Below are positions 1 to 64,000 of a stretch of DNA of 64,000 bases, piece by piece; position 1 is the stretch's first letter, and the number at the start of each line of letters is the position of its first letter. The notes under the pieces were generated by a model that saw only the letters and a program-made list of their open reading frames with translations, was not told the origin of the DNA and did no database searches. The translations under genes and the position numbers were made by a program. Source of the DNA: Diadema antillarum (lineage: Eukaryota). The DNA lies in assembly GCF_040938485.1 (NCBI RefSeq), contig NW_027270913.1, forward strand, positions 2,046,001 to 2,110,000, read 5' to 3'.

Positions 1-223
1 AGTTGTCCAGCCCTTGCGCGTGGCAGCCGCCGTTCTCGATGACATCTTCCGGTTTTCTTCGAGAGCGTCTCAAGGTGGGCGTAGTACCAGGAGATGGGAT
101 GTAGTCTGATTTTGTTGTGGGTAACGGGGACGGCAGGACCGGCTGTTTAAAGTCGCCGCTCTTACTCCTGCTGGCCTGAGAGTCTTCAACTCCGGAAAGC
201 GATTCATTACCCCGGATGAACAT
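1..223 (-). CDS. Partial ORF running off the left edge; probable N-terminal cytoplasmic tail of another SLC35G-like paralogue
   Basis: ATG at 223 opens a stop-free frame to position 1 (MFIRGNESLSGVEDSQASRSKSGDFKQPVLPSPLPTTKSDYIPSPGTTPTLRRSRRKPEDVIENGGCHAQGLDN). GC is higher than the flank and a T-rich tract plus CTGCAG acceptor lies 10 nt upstream. It is on the same strand as the cluster and ends in GLDN, like the GLDNEAF motif of paralogue C2. No TM domain is visible inside the window. Confidence 0.5.
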   Translation of the reverse strand, partial: MFIRGNESLSGVEDSQASRSKSGDFKQPVLPSPLPTTKSDYIPSPGTTPTLRRSRRKPEDVIENGGCHAQGLDN

Positions 224-904
224 ACTTTATCTCCTGCAGACAACGATAACGACAATAAGACAGATCATAGTCAATGACATGCGTTTTGTCTTTAGTCAAT
301 TTGTATCTGATGATAACACAAGCAAACATAAATTATATAATGAGACATCAAAAATCACAGTAAAGCTTGAAGTAGAGGATTTTGCATTTAAGGAATCCAG
401 TCGATAAACTCTGTGCTGCGTTTATTTGATTTTCACTTTTGATTTATTTCGGTGACTTTTGTTGTTGTTTTTTGGAGAAGAAGAAGAATACAATGTACAA
501 ACGAAAAGAGAGCAAATACACAGCTTATGGTGAAATGACATTCTCTGAGGAAAATCATATTTAACAAACGAATTCAATTAATAGTTAAAATACAAAATGC
601 AACAGAACGTTGAATTTTCTTTTACATGACATCTTACAATCACCATACTTTAATAATGATTCTTGATGAGGTGACAGCCGTTTCATGAAAAAAGGGGTCG
701 CAAGTGCGGGGGGGGGGGGGGAGGGAGGAATCACGAATAGTTTGATTTGATTCTACTTACTAATGAAATATGATTATGCTCAAAGGGATCATAAATAACC
801 ATAGCTCTACATTTCTGTTATAAGTATTTGTACTACATTATATTTCAATACATACTTTTATAACTATGAATATCATTAATATCATGAATATCAATAGCAA
901 TATC

Positions 905-1640
905 TATTTATCATCATTAACTGTACCTTTCTTTCAAAAGGTTTTAAAAGGAGTGAGAATTACTTCAGATGATTAGGAAGAGCATTCCATACGTCAGATC
1001 CACAGTGTCTTTAGGACTTGTGAGCTAACAGAATTCTCGGTTTATCGACATGATCTAAATGAATGTTATTGCAGGTACAGATTGGATATTAATGAACTTT
1101 TTAATTTTGTTAAAGCATGAGGTAGCAGAATCTTTGTACACTTCAACATAAATCTTACCGTTTGAAAATCATTGATATCATCTAATCTGATCATGTGAAT
1201 CGGTTAAATAAAGGATCAATGTATTTTAAAGGTAGAATTCATACAGCCTTCTTCTTGTACAATTAAATCGTTTTAATTTGGATTTAACACAATTTACCCA
1301 TATGTAAGATTACAGATAAAGTATGTGAGGTAGGGTTACAGTAGAGTGTTAAGGCATTAAACGAATTTTTGAGACAGAAGTGTTTTATCCTATTGCATGG
1401 AATTCAAATTCCTTCAGCCAATTTTGAAGATATATTAGCTGTATGATAATTCCACCTTAAATAATTGTCAATCATTACTCCTAATTTTTATCTAAAAATG
1501 AATTTTCAATCTTTATTATCATAATCAATTTGCTGATTGACATTGGAGTGTGCAGTTTTTATGCATCATTAAATTTACCAATATTTAGCGATAGTTTATT
1601 ACATTTCAACAAATTTGCCAACCAAGACATGCAAGATTTT
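905..1640 (-). mobile_element. Degraded CR1/L2-group LINE ORF2 3' fragment
   Basis: Broken frames give NKLSLNIGK, LGVMIDNYLRWNYHTANISSKL, KKAV*I..IDPLFNRF, and KPRILLAHKS*RHCGSDVWNALPNHLK. These are colinear with the C-terminus of the LINE ORF2 at 38887-40443, with many stops and frameshifts. Confidence 0.8.
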
Positions 1641-4019
1641 GTTACAATTCAGTACATTTTTTTTTCAGTCTCGAAACGTTGCTAAACCTTGCCTTTAAAC
1701 ATTACCCAACATTACCTAATGAAGGCCATCAACAGTGAAACAGACTTCGGGGCCAATCCCGATGTACACTTCCTATCGCAGATTACTTACTGTCATCTTA
1801 TCATAGTGTTAAGATTACAAAGAATCCCTGATTACTAGTCTCTACTCAGCGACACAGCCTTTGACCAGGGAGATGTTACATAGTGGAAGCAATTTGTGCA
1901 AATTTATGCGTAGGTTGGCTAGCATTTCACTGGCTTTGATGTCCCATGCTCCAATCCACTCCTCCATTGAGATTGGATGTGGAGACCAATGAAGTGGTTC
2001 TTGATGATCAAAAAAATATATATAAGTCGTATTGAAGAGAAAAATTAAATGTTTAAATCCTGTATGGAATATGATGGAGATGATATCGATGAAAAAAATA
2101 TACATCTTCAATCTCATTTTTACAAATGCCCCAGGACTAAAGAAAAATAACTACAAAACAAGAATATTAGTAGCCTCTCAACAACAAAAAAAGAAAGAAA
2201 GAAAAAAGGTATACATTTAACCATCGTGAGAACAATTGTGCGCAAACTTGATCGCCAGGTTTTAACACTTGAATATCATTTCTTTTTAAATTAAGTAATT
2301 GTCTAATGTGATGTCGACGCACTTAGTCAGACAGTAACATTTTACATCCAAAGAAGTACATTTTTAAATTTTTTTATCCTGTCCTTTACATATTAATATT
2401 TGCTACCGAAAATATTACGAGACTATAAATATATGAACTGCTGCTCGCTATAGATTTGTCGTGATTCGGGAATGATGCATATTTGAACAGAAGGGATCTG
2501 TTTTATCAATGCAATGTATTGTCACCTGCGATTTAAAGCTGATAATCTCCGCGACAAAAAGGAGAATAGAGAGATTCTGGTTTCTTCTCCTCCGATTACA
2601 TTTTCCTCCATTGACATATTGACCATTGACGTATACTGCTATCCATACTTTTATTCATAAAAAAATAACAGCTATTTGAATACTCTGGAATAAGACTGAA
2701 TGTATGTTTGAACGAAAATCAAATCTCAACAAAACCCTATGCATCGACTTTTTCCTTACAGCACCAAGTCCCGAGGCTAGTTGCTGTAAAAATGATCATC
2801 CTGCCGTCATTAAACTCCCACCTCAAAATGTCACTTTGTGTCTGACACTGGAAAAAGACTGGAAGGAACTTACGAAATTTGTTAAGTCTTCACTTGATCG
2901 CGGACAGAACTCTATAAAGCTTTACAAAGTTGAAAGAGAGAAGCAAGAATTCAAATCGTGTCAAATGTGTGCCAATTTAAGAAAAAAAAACGTTTTAGAA
3001 TTATTGTTTTAGAATTTGTTTTGAAAATGCAACTGCAACTGCACACAAGCAATTACGTATCAACATCAGCAAGGATCAGAGGGCTAATGACATAATAGAA
3101 ATTGTTTTTTTTTCACTTGTCTCACGATGGATTATAAAACTACATCATAAAGAACAAATCACAGAAATATGGTTTCTGAGTGAATGGGTTGATTATTCAA
3201 AGGTTATAGGACCATGGTTGTCTCCATCTTCAAACTGTCTCCGTGTGTTTTTATATTCTTCAATTGGTAGGGCAAATATCGCCCTGAATTGTGCAGTGAA
3301 TGTCAACATACAACTTAAACATCACAGAACTTCACAAATACCGCTGAATAATTCTGTCTGCGGAATCAAGTGTACATTCAGTCAACTTCGTGTTTAAAGT
3401 AAACGCTTTCGCTCATTGTCGATGCAGCACATGTTCAGAAGGAATTGCCATTAGGCCCTACTGGATGACAACATCAATTCGAAAAAAAAAAAGTTCCGCG
3501 AAAGAAACTGTACATTTACAGCTGCTGCTTACCACACGGTTCACCTGTTTATAAGGTATATACTCTGACATGGGATATGCTGGGTCAATGCGATATGATA
3601 ATCAAATTGATCCCATTTAAGAAAAGGCATGTTAGTGACCATTACTTTATGTTTATTTGCAGCGATATCATAAGTATTGAGGTTTTTTGTTAGTTGCTAT
3701 GATATCATGTTTTCTTATGTTTTATAAGCCTATAACTGATGGAACCGAACATACAACTGCAGATGTGATTCCAGCAGTGTTCACTATCTGCAAGATTTGA
3801 CAATTCCTATTCTCAGAATACTAAAAAGATTCGAAGATTCAAGGTTTGATTCAAACATTGATAGAACACGACTAGGTTAATTCTTATTTCATACTACATG
3901 CAAAGGTATCATGCCTACATGTTTTAAAAGAGTTATAGATGTAATATTAAAACATTGCGCGCAAATCTTGTTTCGATTGAATTTTCAACGAATTGTTCAT
4001 TGGTGTGTATATCTCTACC

Positions 4020-11378: not shown

Positions 11379-13371
11379 TTAAGACCGTCGATTTTCAATG
11401 CAGCCAAAACATGATTATAGTGTATGAACATGCACTCTGACGACTCTGAGTGTTTTATTGACACTTGAACGCGAATGAAATAAAACCTGCGTCGCCTACT
11501 CATGGTGACGGTGCATGGACTTTCAACTCTATGATAAACAGCACAATCTCGTTAACGTGTCATAATTGACAGAGCGTATTTGCCAAACGGGTGTAATTGT
11601 TTCTGATTAAACAATTTCCATTTTTATTTATGCCTTGTTCTCCACGTCTTTATGTTTTAATGCCAATTAGCGGAAGCTTATGGAGCCATTACTTTATCAT
11701 CGCGAATTGTATCAGTCAAGTTTGTTTTCTTTTACGCTTGGCAGGTCGCTTATAAGTTTCTACACACTAATCCACAATTTCTATGTACTCAAACAATACG
11801 TACATTGCATGGATATGTCATCAAGTGTAGGGCTATACGTGCCCTCTCGATAGAGTGTTTGGATATCATTTTCTTTTTGTAACGCAGAATCATATAGAAC
11901 ACATGTACGCGGTCAGATTTGAAAGCAAGATTTCTCATTGGGACATGATATTCAAATTTTTTCTAATTTCATGTTTTTTTTTCTGATTATTTCTGACTAT
12001 AAGAATGACAAAATCGTGTCAAATTCCTCTTGTTTGAGAAATTCAAACAAGCAAGTCAGTGTCGATGCTAATCATGATGCTCACAGGACCTTTGTTGTCC
12101 AAAACGCATGGTACCCTCAACATCACTTATGTGGCGAAACGAATATCTTTTTGTTGTCGTTGTTCTCCTTTTTTTTTTGTCAGATTAACTAGATGCGCCC
12201 TCCAAAACAAAAACAAACGCAAAAACAAACCTTCCAAGCCAATTTTCTGCTTTTGACCTCATCTGTCAATCATTGCTAAGGTACTGGTAAAATTAACAAA
12301 AGACATTGGAATGCACCTTCCCTGAGACCGAACATAGCTTGCACGTTCCCCTGCAATGTCTTTTGTTAAGGATATTAGTACTTTAGCAATGATTCACAGA
12401 TGAGATCACGAAACAGAATACTGGTTTTTGAAGGGTTTGTTTGAGGGCGTATATCCAAGTAATCTAAAGAAAAATAGTATAAAAATATTATGAAATAATA
12501 TATGTAACGTACGTAGAAATTTGTCTCGCAACATAAGTGATGTTGAAGATATCAAGAATCAACACAAATCACAACATGCACTTACATCACATAGGCCCGT
12601 TGATTTCTATTCATTCAACATGTATATATATTACATCCCTAATTCATTACACCATTTAACTACATTATATCCGCTTTCGATGACTGCTTTCAGGCAGAGA
12701 CTATACAGTGATGGCTGCAAGTTCGTGGTGACTTTAATATGGCGCGAAAATCGTACACTTACATTTGTATGAACAACTGCGAGCAGGACAAGGTAGCAAA
12801 CTGACGTGTCATTTGTAATTAGTGCACCAGTTGGAATAACATATCTTTCTCTACAAATAGGAATAAATACCAGACCTCTTAGATCGCACTGGCCATGTCT
12901 ACGTACAGGATATGATAACGCAATACGTTGAGAGTTACTGCATGCCTACAAAACATCTTCCCCAGCATAGGTTTTTAAGGATCCCTTGTCGAAGAAATGT
13001 AGGCAAGATTACTTCCGTGTTTGCCATTGTCGTGATCGTGTTGCGTGAACATTGACCATCGTTACCATGCTTCTCTATAATGTGATACGATGTCTGTAAA
13101 CAAAACCTGCATTGTTTTCCTAATCTTTGTTGTGAATATTTAGAAAATGAAATCTAAATCTATGCAACATAAGTCAAAACCAACACATGAGATTACGATT
13201 ACCAATCGTAGACCTATTTGGTCGTTTCACGTGAGGTAATTAGAATCGTTTCACGTTGATGTTGAAATGGCACTATCTCAATGTGCGTCAACACGACTGC
13301 CGTGACTTCGTACATGGTTGTACGAGTATCTCTTTATTCATAAGGCAGGAATATGAGTTATGAATTTGAAC

Positions 13372-14718
13372 CTAGAGTTCCTGCGTTGTCTCAATAGATT
13401 GTGTATCGTTCGGAATGCTGAAGTTGTTGTTAGATTGCTTATCATCTTCTTGATTCCGAAGCCGTCTTTTCTCCGTCCACCATTGCCCTGCTGTCAAGCC
13501 AACGAGACTGCCGACGATTATGAATGCTCCAGATATAGTAAAACCATTCGGGACCGTACCGAATATGAGAAAGTCGAGTATGAAGGTGAAGAAGACATCG
13601 GTTGTCCTGATCAAGGAAACGGTAGTAGCCGTCTCATACCTCATGGAGATGACGAAGGTAACTTGGGATGCGAAGGAGAATAGGGAATTGCAGATTAGAA
13701 AGATTCGGCTCCTCCCACAAGGCGGAATTACCCAGTCTCCCAGCCCTGTGGTCATGGATCCACTGACCGTTATCCCTACGATGCAGAGGGTGACCAACTG
13801 GACCAGTGGGTGAACTCGGTAAGCCGCTATCTTCCGAAGAGAAATGTAGATCGTCCCTATGAGGACAGCGCTGATGAGACAGAAGGTCGGTCCGAGAAAG
13901 GAGGACGATGACTCTTCGCCGCCGAAGAGGAATGGTGGTTGGATGACTAGGAACACTCCGCCAATCGTCGTCAGGGAGAAGATCACGTCAAAGACGGTGC
14001 ACGCGTCGCTGAGGAGGACACAGCTGAACAACCCCGTGAAGATTGGCGCACTGTAGAGAATGGCCTTGGCGCTGGCTACTGGCATAACCTGATACGCGAA
14101 GAACACCAGGCAAGTCACCGTGGATCCTATGACAGACCTTAAAACAATTAGAACCCACGCCTCCTTTGGGTACTGGAATGATGCTTTCTGCAAAGTAAGT
14201 AGCGGTATGGAGAACAACAACTGCATGTACATTTGATTGAACACTATCTGATTCGAGCTGACTGACTCTCCTACAAGAACAACCAACATACTACAGATCG
14301 ACAACATCATTGTTGAAAACAGAGCGTAAATCTTGCCTTTCAGCCGACTCGGACAGCAAAAAGTCCCTAGATATTTGGTCCTATTGTTTGATGTCAGAGA
14401 ACTGCTCTCTGACGGAGCTGTCTCTTCTTTCAAATTCAAAAATTCTCTGTCCTTGCAGCTCTCTTCTGGGTGGGTCGTCATAATATTAGTCACTGGGTCA
14501 TTATGGTCGTCGCTGGTGGTGTCATAACCCTTGTTGACGAAAGCATTACTATTATAGCTACTGCCTTCATCAATGCCTTTCATTGTGTATGAATCGAAAA
14601 GGCGTGTATTGCCGGAGTCCTCAAGTGTTTGCGAAGATGTCGATCGTGAAGATTTGGAATCTGTTCCGCAATCTCGACTACTTTCTTGATAAAATCTGCT
14701 TTCCGGGACTGGATCCAT
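13372..14718 (-). CDS. SLC35G1: SLC35G1-like EamA/DMT transporter, clade A copy 1 (448 aa from first ATG)
   Basis: About 10 hydrophobic segments in two EamA repeats, with motifs LRSVIGS, YSAPIFT, QPPFLFG, WVIPPCG and DVFFTFILD..FGTVP. The ORF track start at 14820 is a GTG; the first ATG is at 14718, preceded by a T-rich acceptor (AG at 14747-14748). Confidence 0.92.
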   Translation of the reverse strand: MDPVPESRFYQESSRDCGTDSKSSRSTSSQTLEDSGNTRLFDSYTMKGIDEGSSYNSNAFVNKGYDTTSDDHNDPVTNIMTTHPEESCKDREFLNLKEETAPSESSSLTSNNRTKYLGTFCCPSRLKGKIYALFSTMMLSICSMLVVLVGESVSSNQIVFNQMYMQLLFSIPLLTLQKASFQYPKEAWVLIVLRSVIGSTVTCLVFFAYQVMPVASAKAILYSAPIFTGLFSCVLLSDACTVFDVIFSLTTIGGVFLVIQPPFLFGGEESSSSFLGPTFCLISAVLIGTIYISLRKIAAYRVHPLVQLVTLCIVGITVSGSMTTGLGDWVIPPCGRSRIFLICNSLFSFASQVTFVISMRYETATTVSLIRTTDVFFTFILDFLIFGTVPNGFTISGAFIIVGSLVGLTAGQWWTEKRRLRNQEDDKQSNNNFSIPNDTQSIETTQEL

Positions 14719-14928
14719 GATTTCGGAATCTGCATAAGCTGTCCAGCTATGGATGACAGAGCAAACATAAGCAAAGTAATAAAATAAAACATAAATTCTA
14801 CCTAAGGGAGTATGAGTCACATAATGAATATAAAGGAAAGTGTAGGTGATTGCGATTAGTAGATGGTATTGGTTCTCACTTTCATACTGAAAGTTGATTT
14901 ACCGTCACTGAAGGATGTACTATGTTCT

Positions 14929-14930
<2 letters not shown>

Positions 14931-14970
<40 letters not shown>

Positions 14971-14971
14971 A
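14931..14971. repeat. (CA)n microsatellite
   Basis: CA run upstream of A1, absent at the A2 equivalent. Confidence 0.95.
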
Positions 14972-17900
14972 AATACAAAACCCATGTTCTAATTGGATTT
15001 CAGACTATGCCTTCCCCGACATGGTGAAATTGCGGCGCTTAAGAGAATGTATGTACCTTAGCAAATTTTCTGTCATTCACCTTGATGTGTGAGGATATTC
15101 TCAACAGGACACTAAGCAACAAGGGCTGTATCAACGGTGTTTCCGTAACAACGGAGGTTACCGTTTGTAATTGTGTGTCTTATGTCCTATTGGAGAAAGA
15201 GTTCGTTTCAACGAAAGTGCAGTACAAAACGATAAAACGTTAACATTCAAACACAAGATATTTTTTTTTCTTTCCATTTTAGGCAATTGTCTAAACAGAA
15301 ATAGCGTTTAATCGGCTATCAACCCAGTAGGTTATTACAGTCATTATCATTATTGTTACGCATGAGTGAACACAGCTGTTTTTGTCTTCCAAAGCAGAAA
15401 AACAAAAATTGCAGAAATTAACATTTTTTTTTATTCATTTGCAAATGCCCTTCACGATAGCATTGATAAGAAAGACTTGTTTAACATAATTAGAGACATG
15501 AGCGAAAAGTAAAAATGAGTTTTTGTTCCCTTGTATATCCTGATATTCTCATACAAAAACAAAGTAGGAAACTAAAGGGGAAAATGAGAGGTTTTCTTTT
15601 TGTAAACTGACACTCAATTGAGATATAGGGAGTAAGCCGCAAAGGTGATAAAATGGAAAGAATTTCTGTATTTCATTTCTTTTAATTTCATAGGAATGTT
15701 AGAATTCATGAGAACCAAATACAATATTCAAGTTTCTTAACTTGAAATAATATTCCAAGTTTCTACAATCTGTTTTTTTGATATTGCTTCTTCTTTGATG
15801 TCTTTTGATATTTGTTTATTGCCTTTATTTATCTTTGGGGGCTACAGAGACATTATAGAGATCAGAGGGTGATTTTTTTGCAAATTGATTTATGTTTCTT
15901 ATTGTGTTAAATTTGTCTTTTGTTCAGAAAATATGTACGAATGAGAAATTGTCCATTTTTGCAATTTTTACTTTTGTGCCTTGGACCAGAAAAACGCTGG
16001 TGTGCACTCATCCATAAATTTTCCATTTTAATGATCTACCAGGTTAATAGCCAATAAAATTACCTTTAAAATGATGTATAAAACATTAATATCTAGCCAG
16101 ATTTCTATGAGAAACATGAGCTTGAAAAAGTGTTTGTTTTCTTTCTTTTGCTGAGTGTACGTACGTATATTCAAAACACGATGACGTTTTGCAGCAAGGA
16201 ATAATCAAGATCTCCTAGCCTCATTGTGTAAAATGTTATTCTGTCCCACAAGACATTGAATGACTTCAAACCTATCCCAATTGCGTTTCGAACCCTATTC
16301 ATGTTTCCTCAAGTCATTTCAAATTTTATGGTATCGAAATGACGACCGACATCACATAACCGCAGCTGTAACACAGAGAGAAAGCGAGGGGGGAGGGGGA
16401 GTGTTCGACTAACAACACATGACAACTGTTATAATACCATGTGTTAATGAAGAATTTAGACAGCTGCTTGGTCAGTGGTGAACTTATCCAAACCGTCACG
16501 ACCAGACAGACAGATGCATATTACCAAAACAAACAACTGACAGCTGACTGGAATTTGTAAAAGAATACTTTTGGCTTGTGTTTAAGTTGACTTAGAAGTA
16601 TAAGACAACAACCTACAAAAGGATGGCGAAAGTTTCATAACGATGAGACGTAAGATAAAGATAAAGATCTTATAGTTTTTTTCACAATTTCACCAAACTC
16701 TGATTCGATCTACTACCACTCTGCAGCTTACAGGATGTAAAAATTTCATATCACAAATTACTTTTCTTGTCCTATGTCCGATTTTCATTAATCCTCTTTT
16801 CGTACGTTCGATTTGATTTTACTTCCTCACCGCAACTGAACTTTCTAGAGCAATATTGTACTTTCCCACCAACTAATTGTACTGCATACATGTGCCATAA
16901 AAACTTACCTACAATATCAACGGCGCTGGCAACAAGTTGTCACATCAATGTACGTTTGAATGCGTCTCAATTGATGTTTGATAATCGACGTCTAATAGGC
17001 TTATCTCGAACACACGAGGACTCTTCGCCATACAGCGAATCGTTCACAAAGGTTGACAAATACGAAAACGTAACGTCAGGCCCCTTTTGTATAATTTCAG
17101 ACGTAAGATTGTGAGTAGTCAACCATGATCCCCATCAAGTATTCAAAAGCATTACTCATCGAAACATCAGCTCTTATCAAGCTTCTGTTTCATCTAATAT
17201 CTGCATTAATAATTGATCCAATGCGTTCGTTACTGTTTAACCCATCCGGTCGGTACTACAGAACTTTGAAAGTCACAAATATCTCAAATTGACATGAAAG
17301 GTCTTGTTTAACGATCAAACTGTTCATACATTCATTCATTGATAATGATACAAATACTGTAACTCGTTATTTAGGTATATATTAAGGATGATTTCTTTTT
17401 CTCAAACAATTTGTGTTAGTAAATTGATTAAGTACTCGTATTCGAGATTTTGATAAGAGACACCATTCAAGAAAAATCTGGAAACAAAATAGTGAAATAC
17501 TTTTTGTTTACCACGTTTTAATACTGTGACGACACAAGCTGCTGTTTTCCCATCTAAAAAGACTATAGCTAACCAATATAATCATTCAATTCAATTCAAT
17601 TCAGTTATTTTCATTTATATTTTTCCACAAAATATAACCCAGATGATGATGCGATTTTTCTTTAATGTGGATAAATTGTATGATAGCTCAATACGTTCCA
17701 TTCAATTTGGAGGTATTTATGTGTCATTGCAATGTATTTACCCTTTGGGATACGATTTTGAAAGTTTTCACCAAGTAAACCATTCTAATAATAATAATAA
17801 TAATACCATCACACACACACACATACGCACGCACACAAAACAACAACAGATCAAAAAAATGTTTAAAACGTGTGTCTTCATTATTCACTATGCATTGTGC

Positions 17901-18213
17901 CTATAATACATTATGGTATGCACAAACGGAGATAGAACACGACACTGATCGAGATTACCAATTCTCGTTGCCAAGTTGTCCGGTCTGCGGATCTACGCAG
18001 TTAAGTAAACATAAAACGAAGTGATGCTGCATGTTCCAAAACCTTTACCTATAGAATTTTTAACTCAGATGTAGTCAACTGCTTACAACGGACATAAGGT
18101 TAGAAAATATTGTTGAGACAATTGTATATTGTATTCTCTCAGCTTGAGAACCCTGACGCCTATAGAATCGGCCTTTTGCAGTCTCTGTTATACGGAAATG
18201 ATAAGCCTCAGAT

Positions 18214-23044: not shown

Positions 23045-23069
23045 AGAAGGAGAAGCAGCAAGTAAAGAT

Positions 23070-45910: not shown

Positions 45911-47116
45911 TTACATTTGCATATTGCTTGAGCTCACACCACTCTCACTTGCGGCGACGCTACACTTGTCCGATTTGTCGTCAGAAAGCATCTTTTTTGT
46001 GGGAGGTGACTTTTTTCCAGTAATGCCAATGAACCCTGTCACAATCAAAGCAGTTCCTACAATTGTGATGTAATTGGGGACGGTACCAAAAAGAAAGTAT
46101 TCAAAGACAAACGCAAACATGACGTCGCTCGAATGGATTAACGACACGTTCGCAGCCCGCTGAGATTTTAGGGCTATGAAGACTAAAACCTGTGAGAGGA
46201 AATTGCAAATGCCGTTCAATATGATTGAGATGCGATCCAAGCCGCATCCAGGGAGAGACCATTGGTTGGTAGAGGAAGTCACTACTGCGGTGAAGCACAC
46301 GCCGAATGAAGAGTAGAGGGTGAGCATGACCATGGGGGTCATGCCGTACAAGCCGAGTTTCCGCAAGATGATGATGATGACGGAGTTTAAGAAGGCTGCC
46401 AAGAGACTTAGCAAGGCGCCCAGGACGCTGGAACTTGACTCAGAATCCTCATGCTCCGAGAGGTCAAAAAGGAAAGTGGGCTGCGCCACCAGAAACACTC
46501 CTGTTAGCATAACCAGGCCTAAGACGGCGTCCAGAATCGAAAACTTCTCCTTTAAGAGCAGCCAACCTAAGAGACCAGTGAACAAGGGACTGCAGTATTG
46601 TATCGCCTTCGCGTTGGCCACAGGCATGATTTGGTACGTGTAGAAAACGACAATTGTGTTGGTGGACCCGAGGATGGAGCGCAAGAGTAGGACGATGTAA
46701 GCCGCTCGTGAATATTTGAAGGATGGTCTTTGAAATACTATGATAGGAACACAAATTATAAGCTGGATGGCAAAGCGGGTGAAAGATATCTCATTTGCTG
46801 ACACTGATCCCTCCAGCTGCTTGACGGTCATGCCAGAAAAGGCTATGACGAGGGCTGACAAGACAGTAAACCAGATGCCCCTTTGCTTCAACAGCATGTC
46901 CTTACGTTGTAGCGATTTGTCATTCTGTTGCAGTGCACTGGTGGTGTTCTGTGTGTCTAATTCGTGAGTAGCTGTATCGCCTTCGAACGCTTTATTGTCC
47001 GAGCCAGCTCCTGCCCCACCACTACAAGATCGCCGATGAAGGCCTAGTACACTGTTCATGTCGGGATCAGTCCAATCTTCCAGCGTCTCCTGCCCACTAT
47101 TTAGACTTTCAGCCAT
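45911..47116 (-). CDS. SLC35G1: SLC35G1-like EamA/DMT transporter, clade C copy 1 (401 aa)
   Basis: ATG start, intact. Motifs NEISFTRF, LRSILGS, ANAKAIQYCSP, LLKEKF, WSLPGCGLDR and FGTVPN. Confidence 0.93.
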   Translation of the reverse strand: MAESLNSGQETLEDWTDPDMNSVLGLHRRSCSGGAGAGSDNKAFEGDTATHELDTQNTTSALQQNDKSLQRKDMLLKQRGIWFTVLSALVIAFSGMTVKQLEGSVSANEISFTRFAIQLIICVPIIVFQRPSFKYSRAAYIVLLLRSILGSTNTIVVFYTYQIMPVANAKAIQYCSPLFTGLLGWLLLKEKFSILDAVLGLVMLTGVFLVAQPTFLFDLSEHEDSESSSSVLGALLSLLAAFLNSVIIIILRKLGLYGMTPMVMLTLYSSFGVCFTAVVTSSTNQWSLPGCGLDRISIILNGICNFLSQVLVFIALKSQRAANVSLIHSSDVMFAFVFEYFLFGTVPNYITIVGTALIVTGFIGITGKKSPPTKKMLSDDKSDKCSVAASESGVSSSNMQM

Positions 47117-50644: not shown

Positions 50645-51121
50645 CATGGAACCATGGAAATCAAATTTGTGTAAAGCTGGAATACACAAAAATCAGCCAT
50701 AATTCACTTGTGATAGCCCCTGAAAACATATTTCGGTGAATTAGATCATATCTCTATAGCATTTAGTATTTTGGCATTTGTTTTTGCTCCATAAGCGCCG
50801 GTACTGATGTGGACGTGTTTTAAACTATATGGGTATATCTTAAACATTAGGTATATGTTAAAATTCCCTGTTTGATTACTGCTGGTGAGGCTGAAAGCAG
50901 AAAATTTCAGATGATGAATGAGTATGATGAAAAAGACGATAAAGCCTTGATAATTACCAGAAATTGGAAAGGCATTTCCAAGTGAAGTATTTCTTTATAG
51001 AGTTCAAAATCGTTTAGTATACACAAACATTATGTAGAAAAGTAGGCGAACCATAGGCCTAACATATTGATTTCAAAAAATAGATTTCACGTGTTACAAT
51101 AATTTTGTCCCAATAATCTTT

Positions 51122-51179
<58 letters not shown>

Positions 51180-54100
51180 GCACACAATCGTGTATCGTCT
51201 TTTCCATAATGTATGCGTGCATGTGTCTTGACATGTGCTAGACTGTGGACATGCGGATGCCGGTGTGGATACGTGATAAAGTTTGAATGATTTTTAATTT
51301 TAACACGAGTTGGAGTAAAGGAATCATTTTTTAATACTAATTCCTTGGTACAGATTGATTGAAGCCTATACTTATACAGTGGTGATATACACAAGAATAT
51401 TTTCTTTTCGTATTTCCTTTCTATGGTATTGGTTCAGTGATATTTATTTCTGATGCTTTCTTAAGTAAATCTGTAGCATATTATTTGGCAAGTTTGTATT
51501 AAGTGTATCATGAATGATGTTGAGTAATATTCATACTCGTCATAGAGTATATAGGTAGGTGAAGTATGACGTGTGGTTAAACATTTTTGTGTGCAATATA
51601 TTCATATTTAATGATGAGATTTCCTATGTGGATTTTTGTATGATAGCGCAGTGTGTTCTATTTAATTTTGAGGTATTTGTATGTCATTGCGATGTATTTT
51701 ACCCTTCGGGCTACGATTTTGTAAGTTTTCACCAAATAAACCACTCTAGCAATAATAATAACAATAAAACAACATACACACACACACACTCACAACATCT
51801 ACAACAACAACAACAACAGATACAATTTTTCTTTAAATGTATGTCTTCATTATTCATTGTATGCATTATACCTACAATACATCATGGTATCACACAAACG
51901 GAGATACAGAATACGACACTGATAGAGAATAGCAATTCCCGTTGTCCAGTCTGCGCATCTACGTTAAGTAAACATAAAATCTTGCACAGAAACAATAAAA
52001 AGAAATGGTAATGCATGATGTTACAAAACCTCTACTAAGAATCTTTTGTTCAGGTGTAGTCAACAGTTTACCAGGGACAAGAGGTATTGTTGACAGACTG
52101 CTGAATTGTATTCTCTCAGCTTGATAACCATGACCCCCTTTTGCAGTCTCTGTTACGAGGAAATGATAAGCCTCAGGTGCAGATGAAAGTAAAATTCTGC
52201 CATGTTGTTGCGTATTAATCACAAAAGCATCTTTGACAAGAATTATTTCGCAGACGTTGAAACTTGTGTACATCGTATTATCTTTTGAAGATAAAAAAAT
52301 CCTCATATCTGGCTGGAATGCTCTCCAGGGAGTGGAGGGTGAGCTCTGTCAGTGCTGGCGAGAAATAAGGTATCCAGACACTGGGTTAATAATAGCATTA
52401 ATATGAGCTTTGAGCACTCTACAGAGTGGATTTGGCGCAATACAAATTCATATTTTTATCATTATTGTTATTATTTTTTTGACACCTTGATAAGGATAAA
52501 CCACAGGTTCCGACTTACTTTCCTAAGACCATTTCATGGCATGACATGATATGGCATAACATTTCGTTTTCCACATCATAATGACGTACATAGTAAGTAC
52601 TTCTGCAAATCCACAGCATTGCAGCACAACACACACCTCACTCTTCTGCACACCCTCTGCACTGTGCTCCATCAGAGATGTCATACTTAAAATGTACGTT
52701 TTCATTTCATATTGTTGTAACACCACCTGGGGCCATTTTCATTATTATAGTCAATCTCTACTTATTAACATAGTTCCTTGTACGTCTAAATATCTTCTCG
52801 AAATCGTTTAATACACGAAGTGATTGCTCTGTCAATATACCATCAATATGACAATGCTATATATTTTTACATTAAACGGTTTTCCTATACAGTGCAACAT
52901 TTATGTATATTGACGTATATAACTCATGTGATTATGCCTACACTTTGCAAAATGTTGTCTTTCTGTATATTTTAAATGAAATGGAAAAATAAAAATGGAT
53001 TAAACTGGACGGAAATGTTGCATGAGGTCTCGTACACAAAGCAAAACAAAACAAAGCAATACAGTAGAAAGATAATTTATTGAATCCGTTCGAATGTTCG
53101 AACGGATTAGTTTGTCTGTTCTGACTAGTTTGTCTGCACATTATAAAATGACCCGACAATAGTTTGGTAGTCAAGAGCCTTACTGATTTTAACAAATAAA
53201 TCGAAAATTGAGTGTGTTAGTTTTTGATTATACAATTTGCCTGTACAATGTGATTTGCCATATGATTATGTAAAATGAATTACCTGTTTCGTAAGAATTG
53301 TGTCTTAGATGTATCATGTTGCATTGTCTTTTATGCTTATGATGAGCACCCTATGGAAGGAAGGGGAGACTGTCTTGAATACACTCGAGCGGGCCTGTGT
53401 GAATATGTACTAGAATATGTTTTTGTTAAACTGAAGAATTGTTCAGTGTTGTAGGTCTAATAACCATGGATGTCATAGAAGCACATATTTATCCATATTC
53501 ATCTATGTGGATAGATCTGAAATTGGCAATGAAACATTACAAATTCTATAACCCGAGACATATCAAAAGTTCGGTTATGTTTGATGATTTACCTTTGATT
53601 TACCATCTGAATGATGTTATATTCAAAACTGCACATTCTTCGTATATAATTTTACTGTCATTGTGCTGTTTTTGTTTTTGGCCAAACTAAATGCTACTTC
53701 TAATCTCAATAATCACATCTGGAACAAGATTTAGTAAAGAACCAATGGCAATGCCTAATTATCTATTCTTTCTACTGAATCACATTTTCAATCATTCGAG
53801 AGTCTTTTTCCTCATTATCTTCAATCACTTTACACGATAATAAGCTTACGATTGTAGCTCTCTGCAGCAGGGAAAGAAGAATTTATTTGAAGGTAAGATG
53901 TCATCGGAATTAACACTAAAATTGGTATGACAGGAAAGAAACCGTTTTAACAAAATTGTACACAAAATAGTGATATATCAAACATTCAGAGTAAGATTGT
54001 ATATCGAACAGGTAAAGAAATTACATTCTCTCGTATACATACATAAATATATACAGCATAAATGATGCAAGAGTTGCTACAGACTGTGTTGTATCTGTTA

Positions 54101-54560
54101 ATATTTCTAGATATCAGCGAAGTGAAGGAATTGCCGAGTTTCACAAATATCTACAGAACATATTACAATTTTCCTTGTAAAGAAAACCACTGCCATATAA
54201 GATCTCTCACTACGAGAACGAAGATGGATTTCAACAATTTCCATTGTGGTGTTTCGCTTCTTTGCAAAGACATTAGGCTGACTTTGGCAACTCTAGAACC
54301 TATCGTGCCTCTGGTCATTTCTGTGAGTAGTGGAAAGGACAGGGCTCAATCTCAGAACAATATCATTAATAAAATACTGCCAAATTCCTGTTCTTTCGCC
54401 TACATTTGCCGTCTTGAATGCGAAGCTTTATGACCTCGGGAAAACACATGATTGATGTTTTTTTTTTTTCGTTTAACGGTATAACGAAATTCCAAAAGAA
54501 ACGAAGAAGAAGAAGGTAAAGATTTAAGATGAAACACACAAAAAGTGTGCGCACGAAGTT
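50645..54560. repeat. Shared non-coding block X, copy 3 (least interrupted)
   Basis: Colinear with X1, X2 and X4. Confidence 0.88.
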
Positions 54561-54606: not shown

Positions 54607-55536
54607 TTAAATATCAATGTCCTCTAAAATAATACAACTACATCCGTCAACATTCTCACAATTCAGTTCTTCGTTTTCATCCTCATCCGTTTTCTTCTGT
54701 GTAATAAGCCACTGTTTTCTTACAATTCCTACAAAGCTCGCTATGATAAGCACAGTTCCTAACAGCATTATCCAGTTCGGAACGACACCGAAGAACACAA
54801 ATTCTATCACAAATGAAAACAGGACGTCGCTGGCGTGATAGAGAGACACATTGAGGGCCCTCTCGTACTTCAGGGCGAGATAGATGAGTATTTGGGAGAA
54901 AAAAAAAATGATGAGGCCGTTAGCAATTAGTGCGAAGCGATCCAGCCCACAAATAGGAAGAGTCCACTGGTTTGGGACGGACGTGGAGAAGGCAGCGAAA
55001 TCGGTAGCGGTCAGAGAATATTATGGTCAGCATTCCTAGAGACGAAATACCCAAGGAGGCAAGTTTTCGCTGTAGGACGAGAATGATCGCGGGGAAAAAC
55101 ACGGAAAATAAGCAAAGGATTGCACCAAGGACGCTGGAGCTGAAAGCCGAAGTCATCGAATCGAGAGCATCGAAGAGAAACGGGGCTAGGGTGGGCTACC
55201 AGATTGAATGACACCCGGACATGACACACCCAATCGGTGCAAGCGAAATAATGGCGGTCAAAGTCTATAGTGTGTACCAAACACCTTTCCACCTCCCAAT
55301 GGCCAACAGGTCCATATTGTCCGTCAGTTAATCTTTTCTGCTTCCATTTCTTTTTCCGACATACTTGGCATTTGTTCATCTTCACGAACACGTATGCCTC
55401 TGTCATTAAAACCCAATTCATTCCTAAGCTGAAGTCACATGATTCAGCATTGTTTCCAGTTTCGATTTTTCTCTCGCAAAATGTCACCATTCTGCTCAAT
55501 CTGTCGTTTCGCACTTGCGCATGTGTTGTCAGCCAT
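54607..55536 (-). pseudogene. SLC35G1-like clade B copy 2, pseudogene
   Basis: Starts MADNTCASAKRQ like B1. It has a +2 frameshift at about 55427, in-frame stops, a 323-nt deletion equivalent to B1 43104-43426, and a further +1 insertion at about 55021. The C-terminal 80 codons are still open. Confidence 0.92.
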
Positions 55537-57225: not shown

Positions 57226-58437
57226 TTACATTTGCATATTGCTTGTGCTCACACCACTCTCACTTGTGGCGACACTACACTTGTCAGATTTCTCGTCAGG
57301 AAGCCTCTTTTCTGAGGGTGACGACGTTTTTCCAGTAATGCCAATGAACCCTGTCACAATCAAAGCAGTTCCTATAATTGTGATGTAATTGGGGACGGTC
57401 CCAAAAAGAAAGTATTCAAAGATAAAGGCAAACATGACGTCGCTCGAATGGATTAACGACACGTTCGCAGCCCGCTGAGATTTGAGGGCTACGAAGATGA
57501 AAACCTGCGAGAGGAAATTGCAAATGCCGTTCAATAAGATTGAGATGCGATCCAAGCCGCATCCAGGGAGGGACCATTGGTTGGTGGCGGAAGTCACTAC
57601 TGCCGTGAAGCACATGCCGAATGAGGAGTAGAGGGTAAGCATGACCATTGGGGTTATGCCGTACAAGCCGAGTTTCCGCAAGATGATGATGGTGACAGAG
57701 TGTAAGAAGGCTACCAGGAGACTAAGCAAGGCGCCCAGGACGCTGGAACTTGACTCAGAATCCTCCTCCTCCGGGAGGCCAAAAAGGAAAGTGGGCTGCG
57801 CCACCAGAAACACTCCTGTTAGCATCACCAGGCCTAGGACGGCGTCCAGAATCGAAAACTTCTCCTTCAGGAGCAGCCAACCCAAGAGACCGGTGAAAAC
57901 GGGACTGCAGTATTGTATCGCCTTCGCGTTGGCCACAGGCATGATTTGGTACGTGTAGAACATGATCATTGTGTTGGCTGATCCCACTATGGCGCGCAAG
58001 AGTAACAGGAAGTAAGCCGCTCGTGAATATTTGAAGGATGGTCGTTGAAAGACAGTGATAGGAACACAAATTATAAGCTGGATGGCAAAGCGGGTGAAAG
58101 ATATCTCATTTGCTGACACTGATCCCTCCAGCTGCTTGACGGTCATGCCAGAAAAGGCTATGACGAGGGCTGACAAGACAGTAAACCAGATGCCCCTTTG
58201 CTTCAACAGCATGTCCTTACGTTGTTGCGATTTGTTATTCTGTTGCAGCGCACTTTTGGTGCTCCTTGTGTCTGCATGCGTATCCCGAGAAGCTGTGTCG
58301 CCTTCAAACGCTTCATTGTCCAAGCCAGTTCCTGCCGGACCACCACAAGATCGCCGTCGAGGGCCTAGAGCACTGTTCATGTCGGGATCAGTCCAATCTC
58401 CCAGCGGCTCCTGTCCACCATGCAGAGTTTCAGCCAT
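57226..58437 (-). CDS. SLC35G1: SLC35G1-like EamA/DMT transporter, clade C copy 2 (403 aa)
   Basis: ATG start; intact paralogue of C1 with the same motifs. Confidence 0.93.
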   Translation of the reverse strand: MAETLHGGQEPLGDWTDPDMNSALGPRRRSCGGPAGTGLDNEAFEGDTASRDTHADTRSTKSALQQNNKSQQRKDMLLKQRGIWFTVLSALVIAFSGMTVKQLEGSVSANEISFTRFAIQLIICVPITVFQRPSFKYSRAAYFLLLLRAIVGSANTMIMFYTYQIMPVANAKAIQYCSPVFTGLLGWLLLKEKFSILDAVLGLVMLTGVFLVAQPTFLFGLPEEEDSESSSSVLGALLSLLVAFLHSVTIIILRKLGLYGITPMVMLTLYSSFGMCFTAVVTSATNQWSLPGCGLDRISILLNGICNFLSQVFIFVALKSQRAANVSLIHSSDVMFAFIFEYFLFGTVPNYITIIGTALIVTGFIGITGKTSSPSEKRLPDEKSDKCSVATSESGVSTSNMQM

Positions 58438-60045: not shown

Positions 60046-61975
60046 AAAGAAGCTGTTGATTTATGTCCTCCATGAGATAAAATCACGAAAATTATCTGAA
60101 ATGCCCCTTTTATGGAGACACGACTTCTTGTTTTATAAGCGCTAGGTACGATATCGTGACGCGTGACCCTCTGAAAATCAACTTGCATGGTAGGCTGCCA
60201 TCACTCGGCTGACCATTGCCAGCTTCATGCCCTTATAGTTAAACGGAGGGGGGAAAAATGCAACGGCTACGATTTCATAGTTGTCAGCTATCGAGAGGGC
60301 AATGATAGTTGTGAAGAAAGGGGAACTCTTCCTCTTTCCAATGGTACTTATGTTAACAAATGTTATGCATGACTGAGCACACGAACTTTAAAAAAAAATT
60401 AAAATGACAAATTGCACTTTTTCCAAGTTTGAGTGCTATCGTGAAGGAACTGTCGTACTGAATGGATGGGATCTGTCAAGGAAAGTGATCAAATTAACAG
60501 GCCAGCCCGACGACTGCAGGGTTGTGTTTACAATGTATAATGGTCCATAATCTTCAACATGACCACGTTGTCGATAACTTGGTCACTTTCACAAAGGCTA
60601 ACCCATTAAACGCTTGAATAGACCCTGTACTTCAGAGCCCCTTTTCTTAGTTCACACTTTTCCAGAGTGTGTGCTTTCTTTCCAGTACTAGTATTTATGT
60701 AGGTTAAGGGATTCCATTTGAATTGAGTCATACATCATTTTAAAGCTAGAGTCTGCTCTTTCAGAATCTGCCCTTAAGTGAAAATCCATGTCTGGGGACT
60801 TTTCGTTGGTTTTGTGGTGCAGGGTCACATATGGACTTTACATGCAACTTGCAGCGTTTCTCAACATTGCAATTATCTTCATTAAAGCCGACATCACACA
60901 CGCACACACAAACACACACAAACACACACACACACACACAAACACACACGCACACACATTATCGTGTATCGTCTCTCCCACTTGTATGCGTGCATGTGTC
61001 TTGACATGTGCTAGACAGTCAAGGTGGACATGCGGATGCCGGTGTGGATACGTGATGATGTTTGCATGATTTTTTCTTTTTAATATTAATTCCTTGGTGC
61101 AGATTGATTGAAACATACTCATGCAGTGGTGATATACGAATATCTCTTCTTTCATATTTGCTTTTTATAGTATCGGTCCAGTGATATGTGTTTATGATGT
61201 TTTTTTAAAGTAAATATGTAGAATATAATTTGACAGGATTTTGTGGTAAGTATATTATGAAGGATGTTGTGTAATATTCATACTCGTGTACTATAAGTAA
61301 AATACGTGGTAATATTTTTGTGCAATATGTTCACATTAAATGATGGGATTTCTTAAGTGGAATTTTGTACGATAGCTCAATGTGTTCTATTCAATTTTGG
61401 AGATATTATTTACATGTCATTGCAATGCATTTTACTCTTCAGGCTACGATTTTGCAAGTTTACACCAAATAAACCATTCTAATAATAATAATGATAATAG
61501 CATCACACACACACACAATACAGAACACGACACAGACAGAGAATAGCAATTCCCGTCGTCCAGTCTGCTGATCTAAACATAAAATCTGTCACAGAAACAA
61601 TAAAAGGAAATGGTAATGCATGATGTTACAAAACCTTGACTAAGATTCTTTAGCTCAGATGTAGTCAACTATATTTACCACGGACAAGAGGTAAGAAAAT
61701 ATTGTTGACAGAATCCTAAATTGTACTCTCTCAGCTTGAGAACCATGACGCCTATAGAATCAGCCTTTCGCAGTCTCTGTTATAAGGAAATGATAAGCCT
61801 CAGATATAGATAACAGTAAAATGTTTCCATGTTGTTGCATATGAATCATACAAACACCTTTGACAAGAATTTTTTCGCATACAGTAAGTTGAAACTTGTA
61901 TACATCGGTAAATATCTTTTGAAGATAAAACAATTCTCATATCTCAATATCTTTCTGACACCTTAATGAACTTAA

Positions 61976-62329
61976 AGGGGATGGCTAGTAACTAATCAGT
62001 GGGAATCGGTGGGAATGCTGGGGAATGATTGTTCCAATCATTGTGGGATTCATTTTATAGTACATTATATATCTATTGTGTGAAACTTATTTGACTCAGA
62101 ATGGGTTCCTACTCAAGTAATGTGCAGTTTAATGTTTCCAGGTTAGCATGCCTCTACAATGACGGGGCATTAAACTGCACATTAATTGAATACAAGACCG
62201 TTTTAAACCAAATAATTTTCACACAACAATTGATATATAATGTACTCTTAAATGAATCCCACAAGAATTGGAACAATCATCCTCCAGCATTCCCACTGAT
62301 TCCCACTGCTCAGTTACTAGCCATCCACT
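61976..62329. mobile_element. Kolobok-like palindromic MITE (354 bp), TTAA TSD
   Basis: TTAA|AGGGGATGGCTAGTAACT ... AGTTACTAGCCATCCACT|TTAA with arms of about 170 bp. The empty site GGTTAAACCACAGG is at about 20824. Confidence 0.88.
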
Positions 62330-62384
62330 TTAAACCACAGGTTCCGACTTACTCTCTTTGGGCCATTACATGGCATGACATGAT

Positions 62385-62630
62385 ATGACATTACATTACA
62401 TTACAATACATGTCTCCTGTCTCATCACATTACATTATATCTCATTACATTACATTACATTACATTACATTACATTACATTACATTACATTACATTACAT
62501 TACATTACATTACATCTCATTACATTACATTACATTACTTTACATAATATCACATTAGATTACAACACATTGCGTTACATTACATCACATTACTTTACAT
62601 CATATTACACTAAATCACATCCTATTACGT
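62385..62630. repeat. (CATTA)n pentanucleotide array
   Basis: Long perfect core at about 62445-62515 with degenerate flanks; only 2-3 units at the homologous X1 site (about 20880). Confidence 0.92.
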
Positions 62631-64000
62631 TATGTTTTCCACATCATAACGACATACTAATATAGGCTAAACCTACGTCAGCATCAGTACAGCACAACAC
62701 ACATGTCACTTTTCTGCACGCCCTCTGCACTGCTGCTCATTCAGAGATGTCAGATTAAAAACGTACGTTTTATTTTATTCAATGTTGTAACATCACCTTG
62801 GTGCCATTTTCCTAGTAAATCTTTGCTTATTACGATGGTTCATTGTATCTATAATAATATCTTCTCGAATTTTTTTTTAGTGCTCGAGGTGTTTACGGCA
62901 CTTTGTTAAATGTTGTTTTTCTGTACTGTAAATGAAATGCAGAAATAAAAATGGATTAAACTGGACGGAAATGTTGCACGAGGTCTCGTAAAAAAACAAA
63001 CAAACCACCAAGCCAGTAGCAAGATAATTGATCCAATCTTTTCGAATGAGAACAGATGTGTTTCTTTTTATGCATGTCATAAAATCACTTAACTATATAG
63101 TCTGTAAAATCGACAGCCTTATTGATTTTAACAAATAGATAACAAAATTGATTACAAAAATTGAATATGTTAGCTTTTTTATAATACAATTTGCTTGTAT
63201 AAAATGATTTGTCATAATTATGATTATGTGAAATCATGTGCTTAAATTGAGCGCCGTATAGAGGGAAGGGGGCCTGTTTCGAATACACTCGAGCTGGCCT
63301 GTGATGAATACGTTATAGAATATGTTTTTGTTAAACTGAAGAATTGTTCCTTGTTATAGGTCTAATAACCAGGAATGCCATAGAAGCACATATCTATCAT
63401 GAAGACAGATCTGAAATTGGCCATGGAACATTACAAATTCTATAACCCGATAGATGTCAAAGTTCGGTAATGTTTGATGATTTACCTTTGCGTGATTCAC
63501 GATCTGAATCATATCATATTCAAAATCGCACATTTTTCGTATATAATTTTACTGTAATTGTGTTGTCTTATTTGGCCAACTAAATGCTACTTCTAACCTT
63601 AATAATCACACCTGGGACAAGATCGAGTAATGGAGAACCAATACCTAAGTATCTTTTCCTTCTATTGATTCGCATTTTCAATCATTCGCGAGTCTTTCTC
63701 CTCATTATCTTCAATCACTCTACACGATAAAAAGCTTGTGATCGTAGCTCCGTGTTGTAGGGACAGAGGAATCCATTTGAAGGTAAAATGTCTTGAATCA
63801 TTGGAAACGACATAAAAATTGGTGCGACATAAAATAAAACATTTTATAATTCACAAAATGGAGATATATCAAACATTCATAGTAGCATTATACATGGAAC
63901 AGGAAAAGAAACCACATTGTTTCGCATACATATAAAATATGTAAGACATAAATGACGCAAGAGTTACTCCAGACAGTGTTGTATCTGTTAATATTTCTAG

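What the first reader, a model, noticed from the sequence alone, without database searches (positions are those of the whole stretch)
1..64000. Birth-and-death array of SLC35G-like transporters built from a two-gene cassette
Seen: the order is [..A1][X1-relic-A2][X2-B1-C1][X3-psiB2-C2][X4-...]. All genes are on the minus strand with single-exon CDSs, and block X always lies 3' of a B-slot gene and 5' of an A/C-slot gene. Inference: an ancestral roughly 12-kb cassette with two already diverged transporters was amplified by unequal crossover. The B slot was lost twice (relic, psi-B2) while the A/C slot stayed intact in every copy, which suggests asymmetric selection. Established: vertebrates have few SLC35G genes, and invertebrate substrates are essentially uncharacterised. 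A three-clade expansion could serve lineage-specific export or detoxification of small metabolites, but this function is speculative.
Basis: partly seen in the sequence, partly recalled or inferred. Interest (0 to 1): 0.8.

Follow-up and report, generated by a model that had tools for sequence, protein, structure and literature searches.

The report
Sea-urchin SLC35G-like transporter tandem array
This stretch of the Diadema antillarum (long-spined sea urchin) genome holds a real but ordinary tandem array of SLC35G1-like membrane transporter genes, built by overlapping segmental duplications of an older gene cluster and not by amplification of one two-gene cassette as first proposed.

Summary
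The window is D. antillarum contig JBFRCO010000025.1. It holds five intact, single-exon, minus-strand EamA/DMT genes: A1, A2, B1, C1 and C2. It also holds one broken B copy (psiB2) and four copies of a ~3.9-kb non-coding block X, with a ~12-kb period. The allelic haplotig and the D. setosum chromosome show the same order, so the array is not an assembly artefact.

Three parts of the interpretation fail.
- **No B relic.** None was found next to A2 in three genome copies.
- **A is not the counterpart of C.** B and C are sisters (97/97). A sits in another old clade, and an A+C clade is rejected (AU p=6e-8).
- **B was not lost twice.** All four psiB copies in the two species share one ~310-bp deletion, so B died once and the dead copy was duplicated along with C.

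Best model: the ancestral order was C-B-X-A. [C-B-X] was duplicated twice and [X-A] once, all before the two Diadema species split. Nothing has changed in the array since. Beyond the window's end lie psiB3 and an intact C3.

Intact genes have dN/dS of 0.3-0.5. The C1 model has a DMT transporter fold. The substrate is unknown and no RNA data were found. This is an ordinary lineage-specific array of low interest.

The parts
13372..14820 (-). A1, an intact SLC35G1-like (EamA x2) gene. The likely start is the ATG at 14718 (448 aa); RefSeq models an internal ATG (403 aa).
25031..26404 (-). A2, intact paralogue of A1 (87% aa; dN/dS 0.48).
42505..43734 (-). B1, the only intact B copy in the array (409 aa). 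Its D. setosum orthologue is 93% identical.
45911..47116 (-). C1, intact (401 aa). The AlphaFold model has mean pLDDT 82 and a DMT transporter fold.
57226..58437 (-). C2, intact (403 aa), 86% identical to C1; dN/dS 0.44.
54610..55536 (-). psiB2, a B pseudogene. It lacks ~310 bp (B1 CDS nt ~321-630, aa ~107-210) and has a frameshift. The same deletion occurs in psiB3 and in both D. setosum psiB copies.
17646..23087 (.). X1, between A2 and A1. It lacks the first ~1 kb of X and carries a 273-bp satellite at 18280-20056. Its homology stops ~70 bp short of where a B stop codon would lie.
31870..42433 (.). X2, between B1 and A2. It is interrupted by a ~1.9-kb inverted-repeat element (32880-34818) and a 4.6-kb LINE (36466-41032).
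50654..54541 (.). X3, between psiB2 and C1. This is the least interrupted X copy (~3.9 kb) and has no Pfam-recognisable ORF.
60895..64000 (.). X4, cut by the window end. On the same contig it is followed by psiB3 and an intact C3.
11655..17521 (.). A1 unit (the gene plus its flanks), paralogous to 23326-31654.
23326..31654 (.). A2 unit. It contains the N run 31054-31207 in its 5' flank.
23088..23325 (.). A 238-bp junction filler between X1 and the A2 unit. This is the place of the claimed 'relic'. It has no significant similarity to any family member.
36466..41032 (+). Non-LTR retrotransposon with endonuclease and RT ORFs in two frames. It is absent at this site on the allelic haplotig.

Best explanation
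The window shows part of an older same-strand cluster of SLC35G1-like DMT transporter genes in Diadema. The cluster was enlarged by three overlapping tandem segmental duplications. In gene direction the ancestral order was C-B-X-A, where X is simply the ~3.9-kb intergenic DNA between B and A. First, [C-B-X] was duplicated. Next, the upstream B copy was disabled by a ~310-bp out-of-frame deletion. Then [C-psiB-X] was duplicated again. Separately, [X-A] was duplicated, with one breakpoint ~70 bp 3' of the B stop codon and 238 bp of filler DNA at the junction. The result is C3-psiB3-X4-C2-psiB2-X3-C1-B1-X2-A2-X1-A1. All of these events predate the D. antillarum / D. setosum split, and the array has kept the same composition since. 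The six intact genes encode 10-helix DMT-fold carriers under moderate purifying selection. By analogy with human SLC35G1, a chloride-sensitive citrate exporter, they most likely move small organic anions or metabolites across a membrane. The order and content of the array are shown. The duplication order is inferred. The mechanism (unequal crossover vs end-joining), the substrate and expression are not shown.
For: Repeat units and X copies come from self-BLASTN. Homology runs unbroken from the X end into B in both BC units: 42038-43103 matches 54099-55217. X1 homology stops at 23087, which corresponds to 54541. In the X tree, each window X pairs with the D. setosum X at the same position (100/100, 99/97 and 97/95). 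The array order is the same on the allelic haplotig, in D. setosum and beyond the window end. In the protein tree B+C are sisters and A lies in another clade, and the AU test rejects A+C. The psiB copies share one deletion and form one clade. dN/dS is 0.29-0.51 for all intact copies. Paralogue dS is 0.12-0.16 and orthologue dS 0.115-0.154. Non-coding K2P between units is 0.10-0.29. Each protein has two EamA domains. The C1 model matches SLC35B1, LicB, TPT, CST, YddG and Vrg4 with TMt 0.65-0.81. The nearest named Atlas clusters are chordate SLC35G1. SLC35G1 citrate export is reported in PMC11542916. The assembly retains both haplotypes (PMC13511894).
Against: The X tree is a three-way split, so the order of the [C-B-X] and [X-A] duplications is unresolved. 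Coding-region dS between paralogues is no larger than between species, and C-gene relationships are muddled. Gene conversion may therefore blur the dating. No RNA run was found and the laid runs were DNA contigs only, so expression of every copy is unproven. Whether A-clade genes exist outside Diadematidae is unknown: the one non-Diadema member has no source name. The substrate is inferred purely by analogy, at ~30% identity or less to other animals' homologues.
Confidence: 0.8

Rival explanations
1. One ancestral ~12-kb cassette [X - B - (A/C)] was amplified by unequal crossover. A is the diverged positional counterpart of C, and the B slot decayed independently twice (the relic next to A2, and psiB2).
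For: X lies 5' of both A-type and C-type genes, with a ~12-kb period. C and A copies are all intact while two of three B copies are dead.
Against: B+C form a clade at 97/97 and A lies in a separate clade at 100/99. The AU test rejects A+C with p=6e-8. There is no A-C flank homology. No relic was found in three genome copies. X copies are 72-80% identical in DNA while A and C coding regions have no DNA-level match. All psiB copies share one deletion.
Confidence: 0.03
2. X is a mobile or otherwise dispersed repeat that landed independently between the genes. On this view the apparent cassette periodicity is a coincidence.
For: X contains embedded repeats: a satellite, an inverted-repeat element, a LINE, and short high-copy elements at 41694-42087.
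Against: X has no transposon-like ORF. Its homology continues without a break into the neighbouring B gene. Outside the short embedded repeats, the X2 tail has contig depth no higher than the adjacent genes (depth from contigs is only indicative). No X match occurs in ~70 kb of non-array DNA: window 1-11000, L002, L004 and the upstream parts of L009 and L003. X copies are positional orthologues between species.
Confidence: 0.05
3. The repeats are an assembly artefact, for example haplotypes stitched in tandem in a highly heterozygous genome.
For: The deposited assembly retains both haplotypes: 1.75 Gb against a ~703-Mb haploid estimate, with 84% duplicated BUSCOs (PMC13511894).
Against: Units differ by 10-29% in non-coding DNA, far above the 2.5% heterozygosity. 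The allelic contig carries the same order at 95-99.7% identity. The D. setosum chromosome-level assembly has the same array, with positional orthology.
Confidence: 0.02

Closest known systems
Human SLC35G1 (TMEM20), a chloride-sensitive citrate exporter of the intestinal basolateral membrane (PMC11542916)
   Same: Both have two EamA repeats and a DMT fold. RefSeq names the Diadema orthologues 'SLC35G1-like'. The nearest named Atlas clusters are chordate SLC35G1.
   Different: Homologues in other animals are only ~25-31% identical. Orthology to vertebrate SLC35G1 was not tested with labelled sequences. The urchin proteins have long, low-confidence N-terminal tails (~75-150 aa). Their substrate and membrane are unknown.
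Solved DMT-superfamily transporters: SLC35B1, CMP-sialic acid transporter, Vrg4, triose-phosphate translocator, YddG, LicB
   Same: The C1 model aligns over ~300 columns with TMt 0.65-0.81 and probability 1.0. It has the same inverted-repeat helical bundle.
   Different: Sequence identity is 9-17%. There is no evidence of nucleotide-sugar binding. The match shows a shared fold, not subfamily membership.
Birth-and-death tandem gene arrays made by segmental duplication, as in many lineage-specific gene family expansions in sea urchins
   Same: Paralogues lie in the same orientation in ~12-kb units. Intergenic DNA is shared between units. A pseudogene is carried along with its intact neighbour.
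   Different: There has been no copy-number turnover since before the D. antillarum / D. setosum split: both have 3 C, 1 B, 2 psiB and 2 A in the same order. Only one death event is demonstrable.

Membership tests
DMT superfamily / EamA (PF00892) | Two tandem EamA repeats above Pfam's gathering score | tested here: met
   All five ORFs score 69-108 bits against a cutoff of 28.2, with two stretches each.
DMT superfamily / EamA (PF00892) | Ten-helix DMT fold | tested here: met
   The C1 AlphaFold model has pLDDT 82 and pTM 0.77. Its top 39 PDB matches are all DMT transporters.
SLC35G subfamily | Groups with vertebrate SLC35G proteins to the exclusion of other SLC35/EamA subfamilies | tested here: inconclusive
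   Support comes from source names and language-model neighbours (score 0.98). No tree was built with labelled vertebrate SLC35G and other SLC35 sequences.
SLC35G subfamily | Citrate / organic-anion export activity | not testable with these tools
   The activity is known only for human SLC35G1 (PMC11542916).
   See the tree. The AU test gives dlnL 91.4, p=6e-8.
   Searches give noise-level scores only.
Birth-and-death tandem array | Tandem same-strand paralogues with pseudogenised members | tested here: met
Birth-and-death tandem array | Copy-number turnover between related species | tested here: not met
   Composition and order are identical in D. setosum and D. antillarum.

The most novel reading that the evidence does not exclude
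Diadematid urchins have kept three C, two A and one B copies of an SLC35G1-like carrier intact and in a fixed order since before the Diadema species split, under purifying selection. This could reflect a lineage-specific need for high-capacity or tissue-partitioned export of a small organic anion such as citrate, for example in calcite spine mineralisation or chemical defence, and not neutral duplication.
Probability: 0.08. Interest if true: 0.45.

Novelty: new member of a known kind. Interest (0 to 1): 0.2.

Why it matters
The finding matters mainly as a correction. The array is real, but its history is three overlapping tandem duplications of an old C-B-X-A cluster, with one pseudogenisation that was then copied. 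The evidence does not support the claim of repeated, asymmetric loss of one slot. For sea-urchin biology it documents an undescribed SLC35G1-like cluster that is conserved between D. antillarum and D. setosum. A full-text search for SLC35G with 'sea urchin' found one unrelated paper. The cluster holds at least six intact genes in the array, with more paralogues nearby. It could be a starting point for substrate assays in a family whose only characterised animal member exports citrate. It opens no long-standing question.

Tried and rejected
- **B relic between X1 and A2.** I searched with TBLASTN (word 2, E<50), word-7 BLASTN, Smith-Waterman against shuffles at DNA and protein level, and two profile HMMs on six-frame pieces. 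All gave noise. The best was one z~3.6 local protein score against the distant B paralogue P0017 among ten comparisons, which I judged not significant.
- **Same search in other genomes.** The D. setosum and haplotig loci also gave nothing.
- **A-vs-C flank homology.** None was found apart from a low-complexity stretch.
- **RNA evidence.** No RNA holder was found. The four laid runs were DNA contigs, which cannot show expression or copy number.
- **Pfam on X and intergenic ORFs.** Nothing was found.
- **tRNA scan for a SINE origin of the high-copy repeat at 45437-45830.** It found no tRNA genes.
- **Crude hydropathy count.** It gave only 7-8 peaks, so I replaced it with the structure model.
- **dN/dS for the psiB2 N-terminal piece.** This failed on an in-frame stop. 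The C-terminal pieces gave 0.67 and 0.32, which is not decisive.
- **Haplotig as independent evidence.** I first treated contig JBFRCO010000132.1 as an independent assembly. It is the other haplotype in the same assembly.
Full report
**What is in the window**

The 64-kb window holds five long minus-strand ORFs: A1 13372-14820, A2 25031-26404, B1 42505-43734, C1 45911-47116 and C2 57226-58437. Each has two EamA (PF00892) stretches well above Pfam's cutoff.

TBLASTN of these proteins against the window gives the following identities:

| Pair | Protein identity |
|---|---|
| A1/A2 | 87% |
| C1/C2 | 86% |
| B vs C | 45-50% |
| A vs B | 38% |
| A vs C | 34-36% |

TBLASTN also finds a broken B copy, psiB2, at 54610-55536. 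It is 80-83% identical to B1, with a frameshift and a missing middle.

Two plus-strand ORFs at 37475-38818 and 38887-40443 encode the endonuclease and reverse transcriptase of a LINE.

**N runs**

There are two N runs, 8197-8374 and 31054-31207. Both lie in intergenic DNA, 5 kb 3' of A1 and 4.65 kb 5' of A2, so no reading frame depends on them. Their flanks are collinear on the allelic contig, 178 bp and 113 bp apart. The assembly paper reports a total gap length of zero (PMC13511894), so they are probably deliberate masks. I did not read or fill their letters.

**Source**

Protein look-ups show that the window's own proteins sit on a 3,430,391-bp contig. That contig is D. antillarum GCA_040938485.1 JBFRCO010000025.1.

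A second contig of the same assembly, JBFRCO010000132.1, carries the same locus at 95-99.7% DNA identity. The assembly paper states that this 1.75-Gb assembly retains both haplotypes of one individual, so this second contig is the allelic haplotig.

D. setosum chromosome OZ188202.1 carries the orthologous locus at roughly 82-91% identity.

**Repeat architecture**

Self-BLASTN confirms the repeat structure:
- **A units:** 11655-17521 matches 23326-31654, a period of 11.7 kb.
- **BC units:** 41033-49186 matches 53414-60606, a period of 12.1 kb.
- **Block X:** four copies of a ~3.9-kb non-coding block, 72-80% identical to one another: X1 17646-23087, X2 31870-42433, X3 50654-54541 and X4 60895-64000.

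X1 lacks the first ~1 kb of X and carries a 273-bp satellite. X2 is split by a 1.9-kb inverted-repeat element and by the LINE.

In both BC units the homology runs without a break from the end of X into the 3' end of B. In X1 it stops at 23087, about 70 bp short of where a B stop codon would lie. After 238 bp of unrelated DNA, the A2 unit begins at 23326.

**The 'relic'**

Nothing between 23088 and 25030 resembles any family member. I tested this with:
- TBLASTN with E up to 50;
- word-7 BLASTN;
- Smith-Waterman against shuffled controls, on DNA and protein;
- two profile HMMs over all six-frame pieces.

The best candidate is an 85-codon open frame at 23073-23327, with HMM E=3.9. The same HMM finds no extra hit between the two A copies in D. 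setosum or on the haplotig.

**Is A the counterpart of C?**

I built an ML tree (LG+C20, 44 proteins) from these sequences:
- the window copies;
- the D. setosum copies translated from the fetched loci;
- other Diadema paralogues;
- Strongylocentrotus and Lytechinus genes;
- more distant representatives from the exhaustive search.

The tree shows:
- B and C form a clade (97/97). It lies inside a 17-member clade (100/99) that also holds the camarodont urchin genes.
- A sits in a separate 9-member clade (100/99) with three other Diadema paralogues. Two of these lie 24-30 kb downstream of A1 on the haplotig.
- Forcing A and C into one clade costs 91.4 log-likelihood units, AU p=6e-8.

At DNA level, A and C coding regions have no detectable match, and B and C match only weakly (67-70% over ~350 bp). 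X copies, by contrast, are 72-80% identical. The X duplications are therefore much younger than the A / B / C gene splits. Outside X, A flanks and C flanks share no homology.

**How many times did B die?**

The contig continues beyond the window. It carries psiB3 and then a full-length intact C3 of 403 codons. Upstream of C3, the DNA is collinear with the region upstream of the first C gene in D. setosum, so the array ends there in both species.

| Species | Array in gene direction |
|---|---|
| D. antillarum | C3-psiB3-X4-C2-psiB2-X3-C1-B1-X2-A2-X1-A1 |
| D. setosum | C404-psiB-X-C401-psiB-X-C403-B-X-A-X-A |

The D. setosum order comes.

All four psiB copies lack the same ~310 bp (B1 CDS nt ~321-630). 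They form a clade (88/97) separate from the intact B1 and its D. setosum orthologue (97/97). B was therefore inactivated once, and the dead copy was then duplicated together with its C neighbour. 'Asymmetric selection' rests on one event.

**Timing**

In a tree of X copies, each window X pairs with the D. setosum X at the same position (100/100, 99/97 and 97/95). All duplications therefore predate the species split, and the array has not changed in composition since.

The distances are as follows:

| Measure | Value |
|---|---|
| Non-coding K2P between units | 0.10-0.29 |
| Paralogue dS | 0.12-0.16 |
| Orthologue dS | 0.115-0.154 |

Together with the poorly resolved relationships among C genes, the similar dS values hint at some gene conversion.

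All intact copies have pairwise dN/dS of 0.29-0.51. That is moderate purifying selection.

**Best model**

The ancestral order was C-B-X-A, with X being ordinary intergenic DNA. The events were:
- duplication of [C-B-X];
- a deletion that killed the upstream B copy;
- a second duplication of [C-psiB-X];
- a separate duplication of [X-A], whose breakpoint lies just 3' of B.

Unequal crossover between existing copies is plausible for the later steps, but it is not demonstrated.

**Rivals**

- **X as a dispersed transposon: unlikely.** X has no recognisable ORF and its homology is continuous with the neighbouring gene. No X copy appears in ~70 kb of non-array DNA that I examined. Contig depth over the X2 tail is no higher than over the genes, apart from short embedded high-copy repeats (indicative only). 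X copies are also positional orthologues between species.
- **Assembly artefact: excluded.** Both haplotigs and D. setosum show the same array.

**Function**

The AlphaFold model of C1 (pLDDT 82, pTM 0.77) matches solved DMT transporters over ~300 columns with TMt 0.65-0.81. These are SLC35B1, LicB, the triose-phosphate translocator, the CMP-sialic acid transporter, YddG and Vrg4.

RefSeq names the orthologues SLC35G1-like, and the nearest named Atlas clusters are chordate SLC35G1. Human SLC35G1 is a chloride-sensitive citrate exporter (PMC11542916).

It is reasonable to infer that the urchin proteins carry small organic anions or metabolites, but this is untested. No RNA run was found, and the laid runs were DNA contigs.

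**Verdict**

The evolutionary story is simpler and different from the one proposed, and the biology is that of an ordinary, stable, lineage-specific tandem array of annotated SLC35G1-like genes.

Noticed in passing
window 36466-41032: A 4.6-kb non-LTR retrotransposon sits inside X2, with endonuclease and RT ORFs in two different frames. It is absent at the same site on the allelic haplotig, where L005 16080/16081 joins window 41030 to 36448. This points to a heterozygous, recent insertion.
   Followed up: partly
window 32880-34818, also 10986-11399: A ~1.9-kb element has inverted terminal arms (32879-33255 vs 34817-34395). About 1.5 kb of it is missing on the haplotig. Related inverted pieces lie 3' of the A1 unit.
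   Followed up: no
window 18280-20056: A 273-bp satellite, 6.5 copies at 92% match, is inserted in X1. It is present on both haplotigs.
   Followed up: partly
window 41694-42087, 44452-44845, 45437-45830: These are short interspersed repeats. In DNA contig sets of two organisms their summed depth is 10^4-10^5, against ~10-100 for neighbouring DNA. ARAGORN finds no tRNA gene here.
   Followed up: partly
window 8197-8374 and 31054-31207: The assembly paper reports zero gaps for GCA_040938485.1, so these N runs look like masks added by the scan. The first equals the 178-bp flank spacing on the haplotig. The letters were not read.
   Followed up: partly
window 8459-8811 and 9780-10183: Inverted copies of a 29/58-bp tandem repeat lie just beside the first N run. 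They look like a foldback element.
   Followed up: no
L004 5280-6716 and 9758-11176; L002 9800-11008 (D. antillarum haplotig): More intact SLC35G1-like paralogues lie near the array. Two A-clade genes sit 24-30 kb downstream of A1 on the same strand. A B-like gene (78-85% identical to B1) sits ~100 kb away in the opposite orientation. A further A-clade paralogue (P0035, 451 aa) lies elsewhere on the window's contig.
   Followed up: partly
window 17270/17271: The haplotig carries ~425 bp here that the window lacks. The extra piece resembles the A2-unit flank at 30506-31051, so this is an indel polymorphism in the A1 unit.
   Followed up: no
L005 2214-2802 (haplotig psiB2): The allelic psiB2 has additional frame breaks compared with the window's copy, as expected for a neutrally decaying pseudogene.
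   Followed up: no
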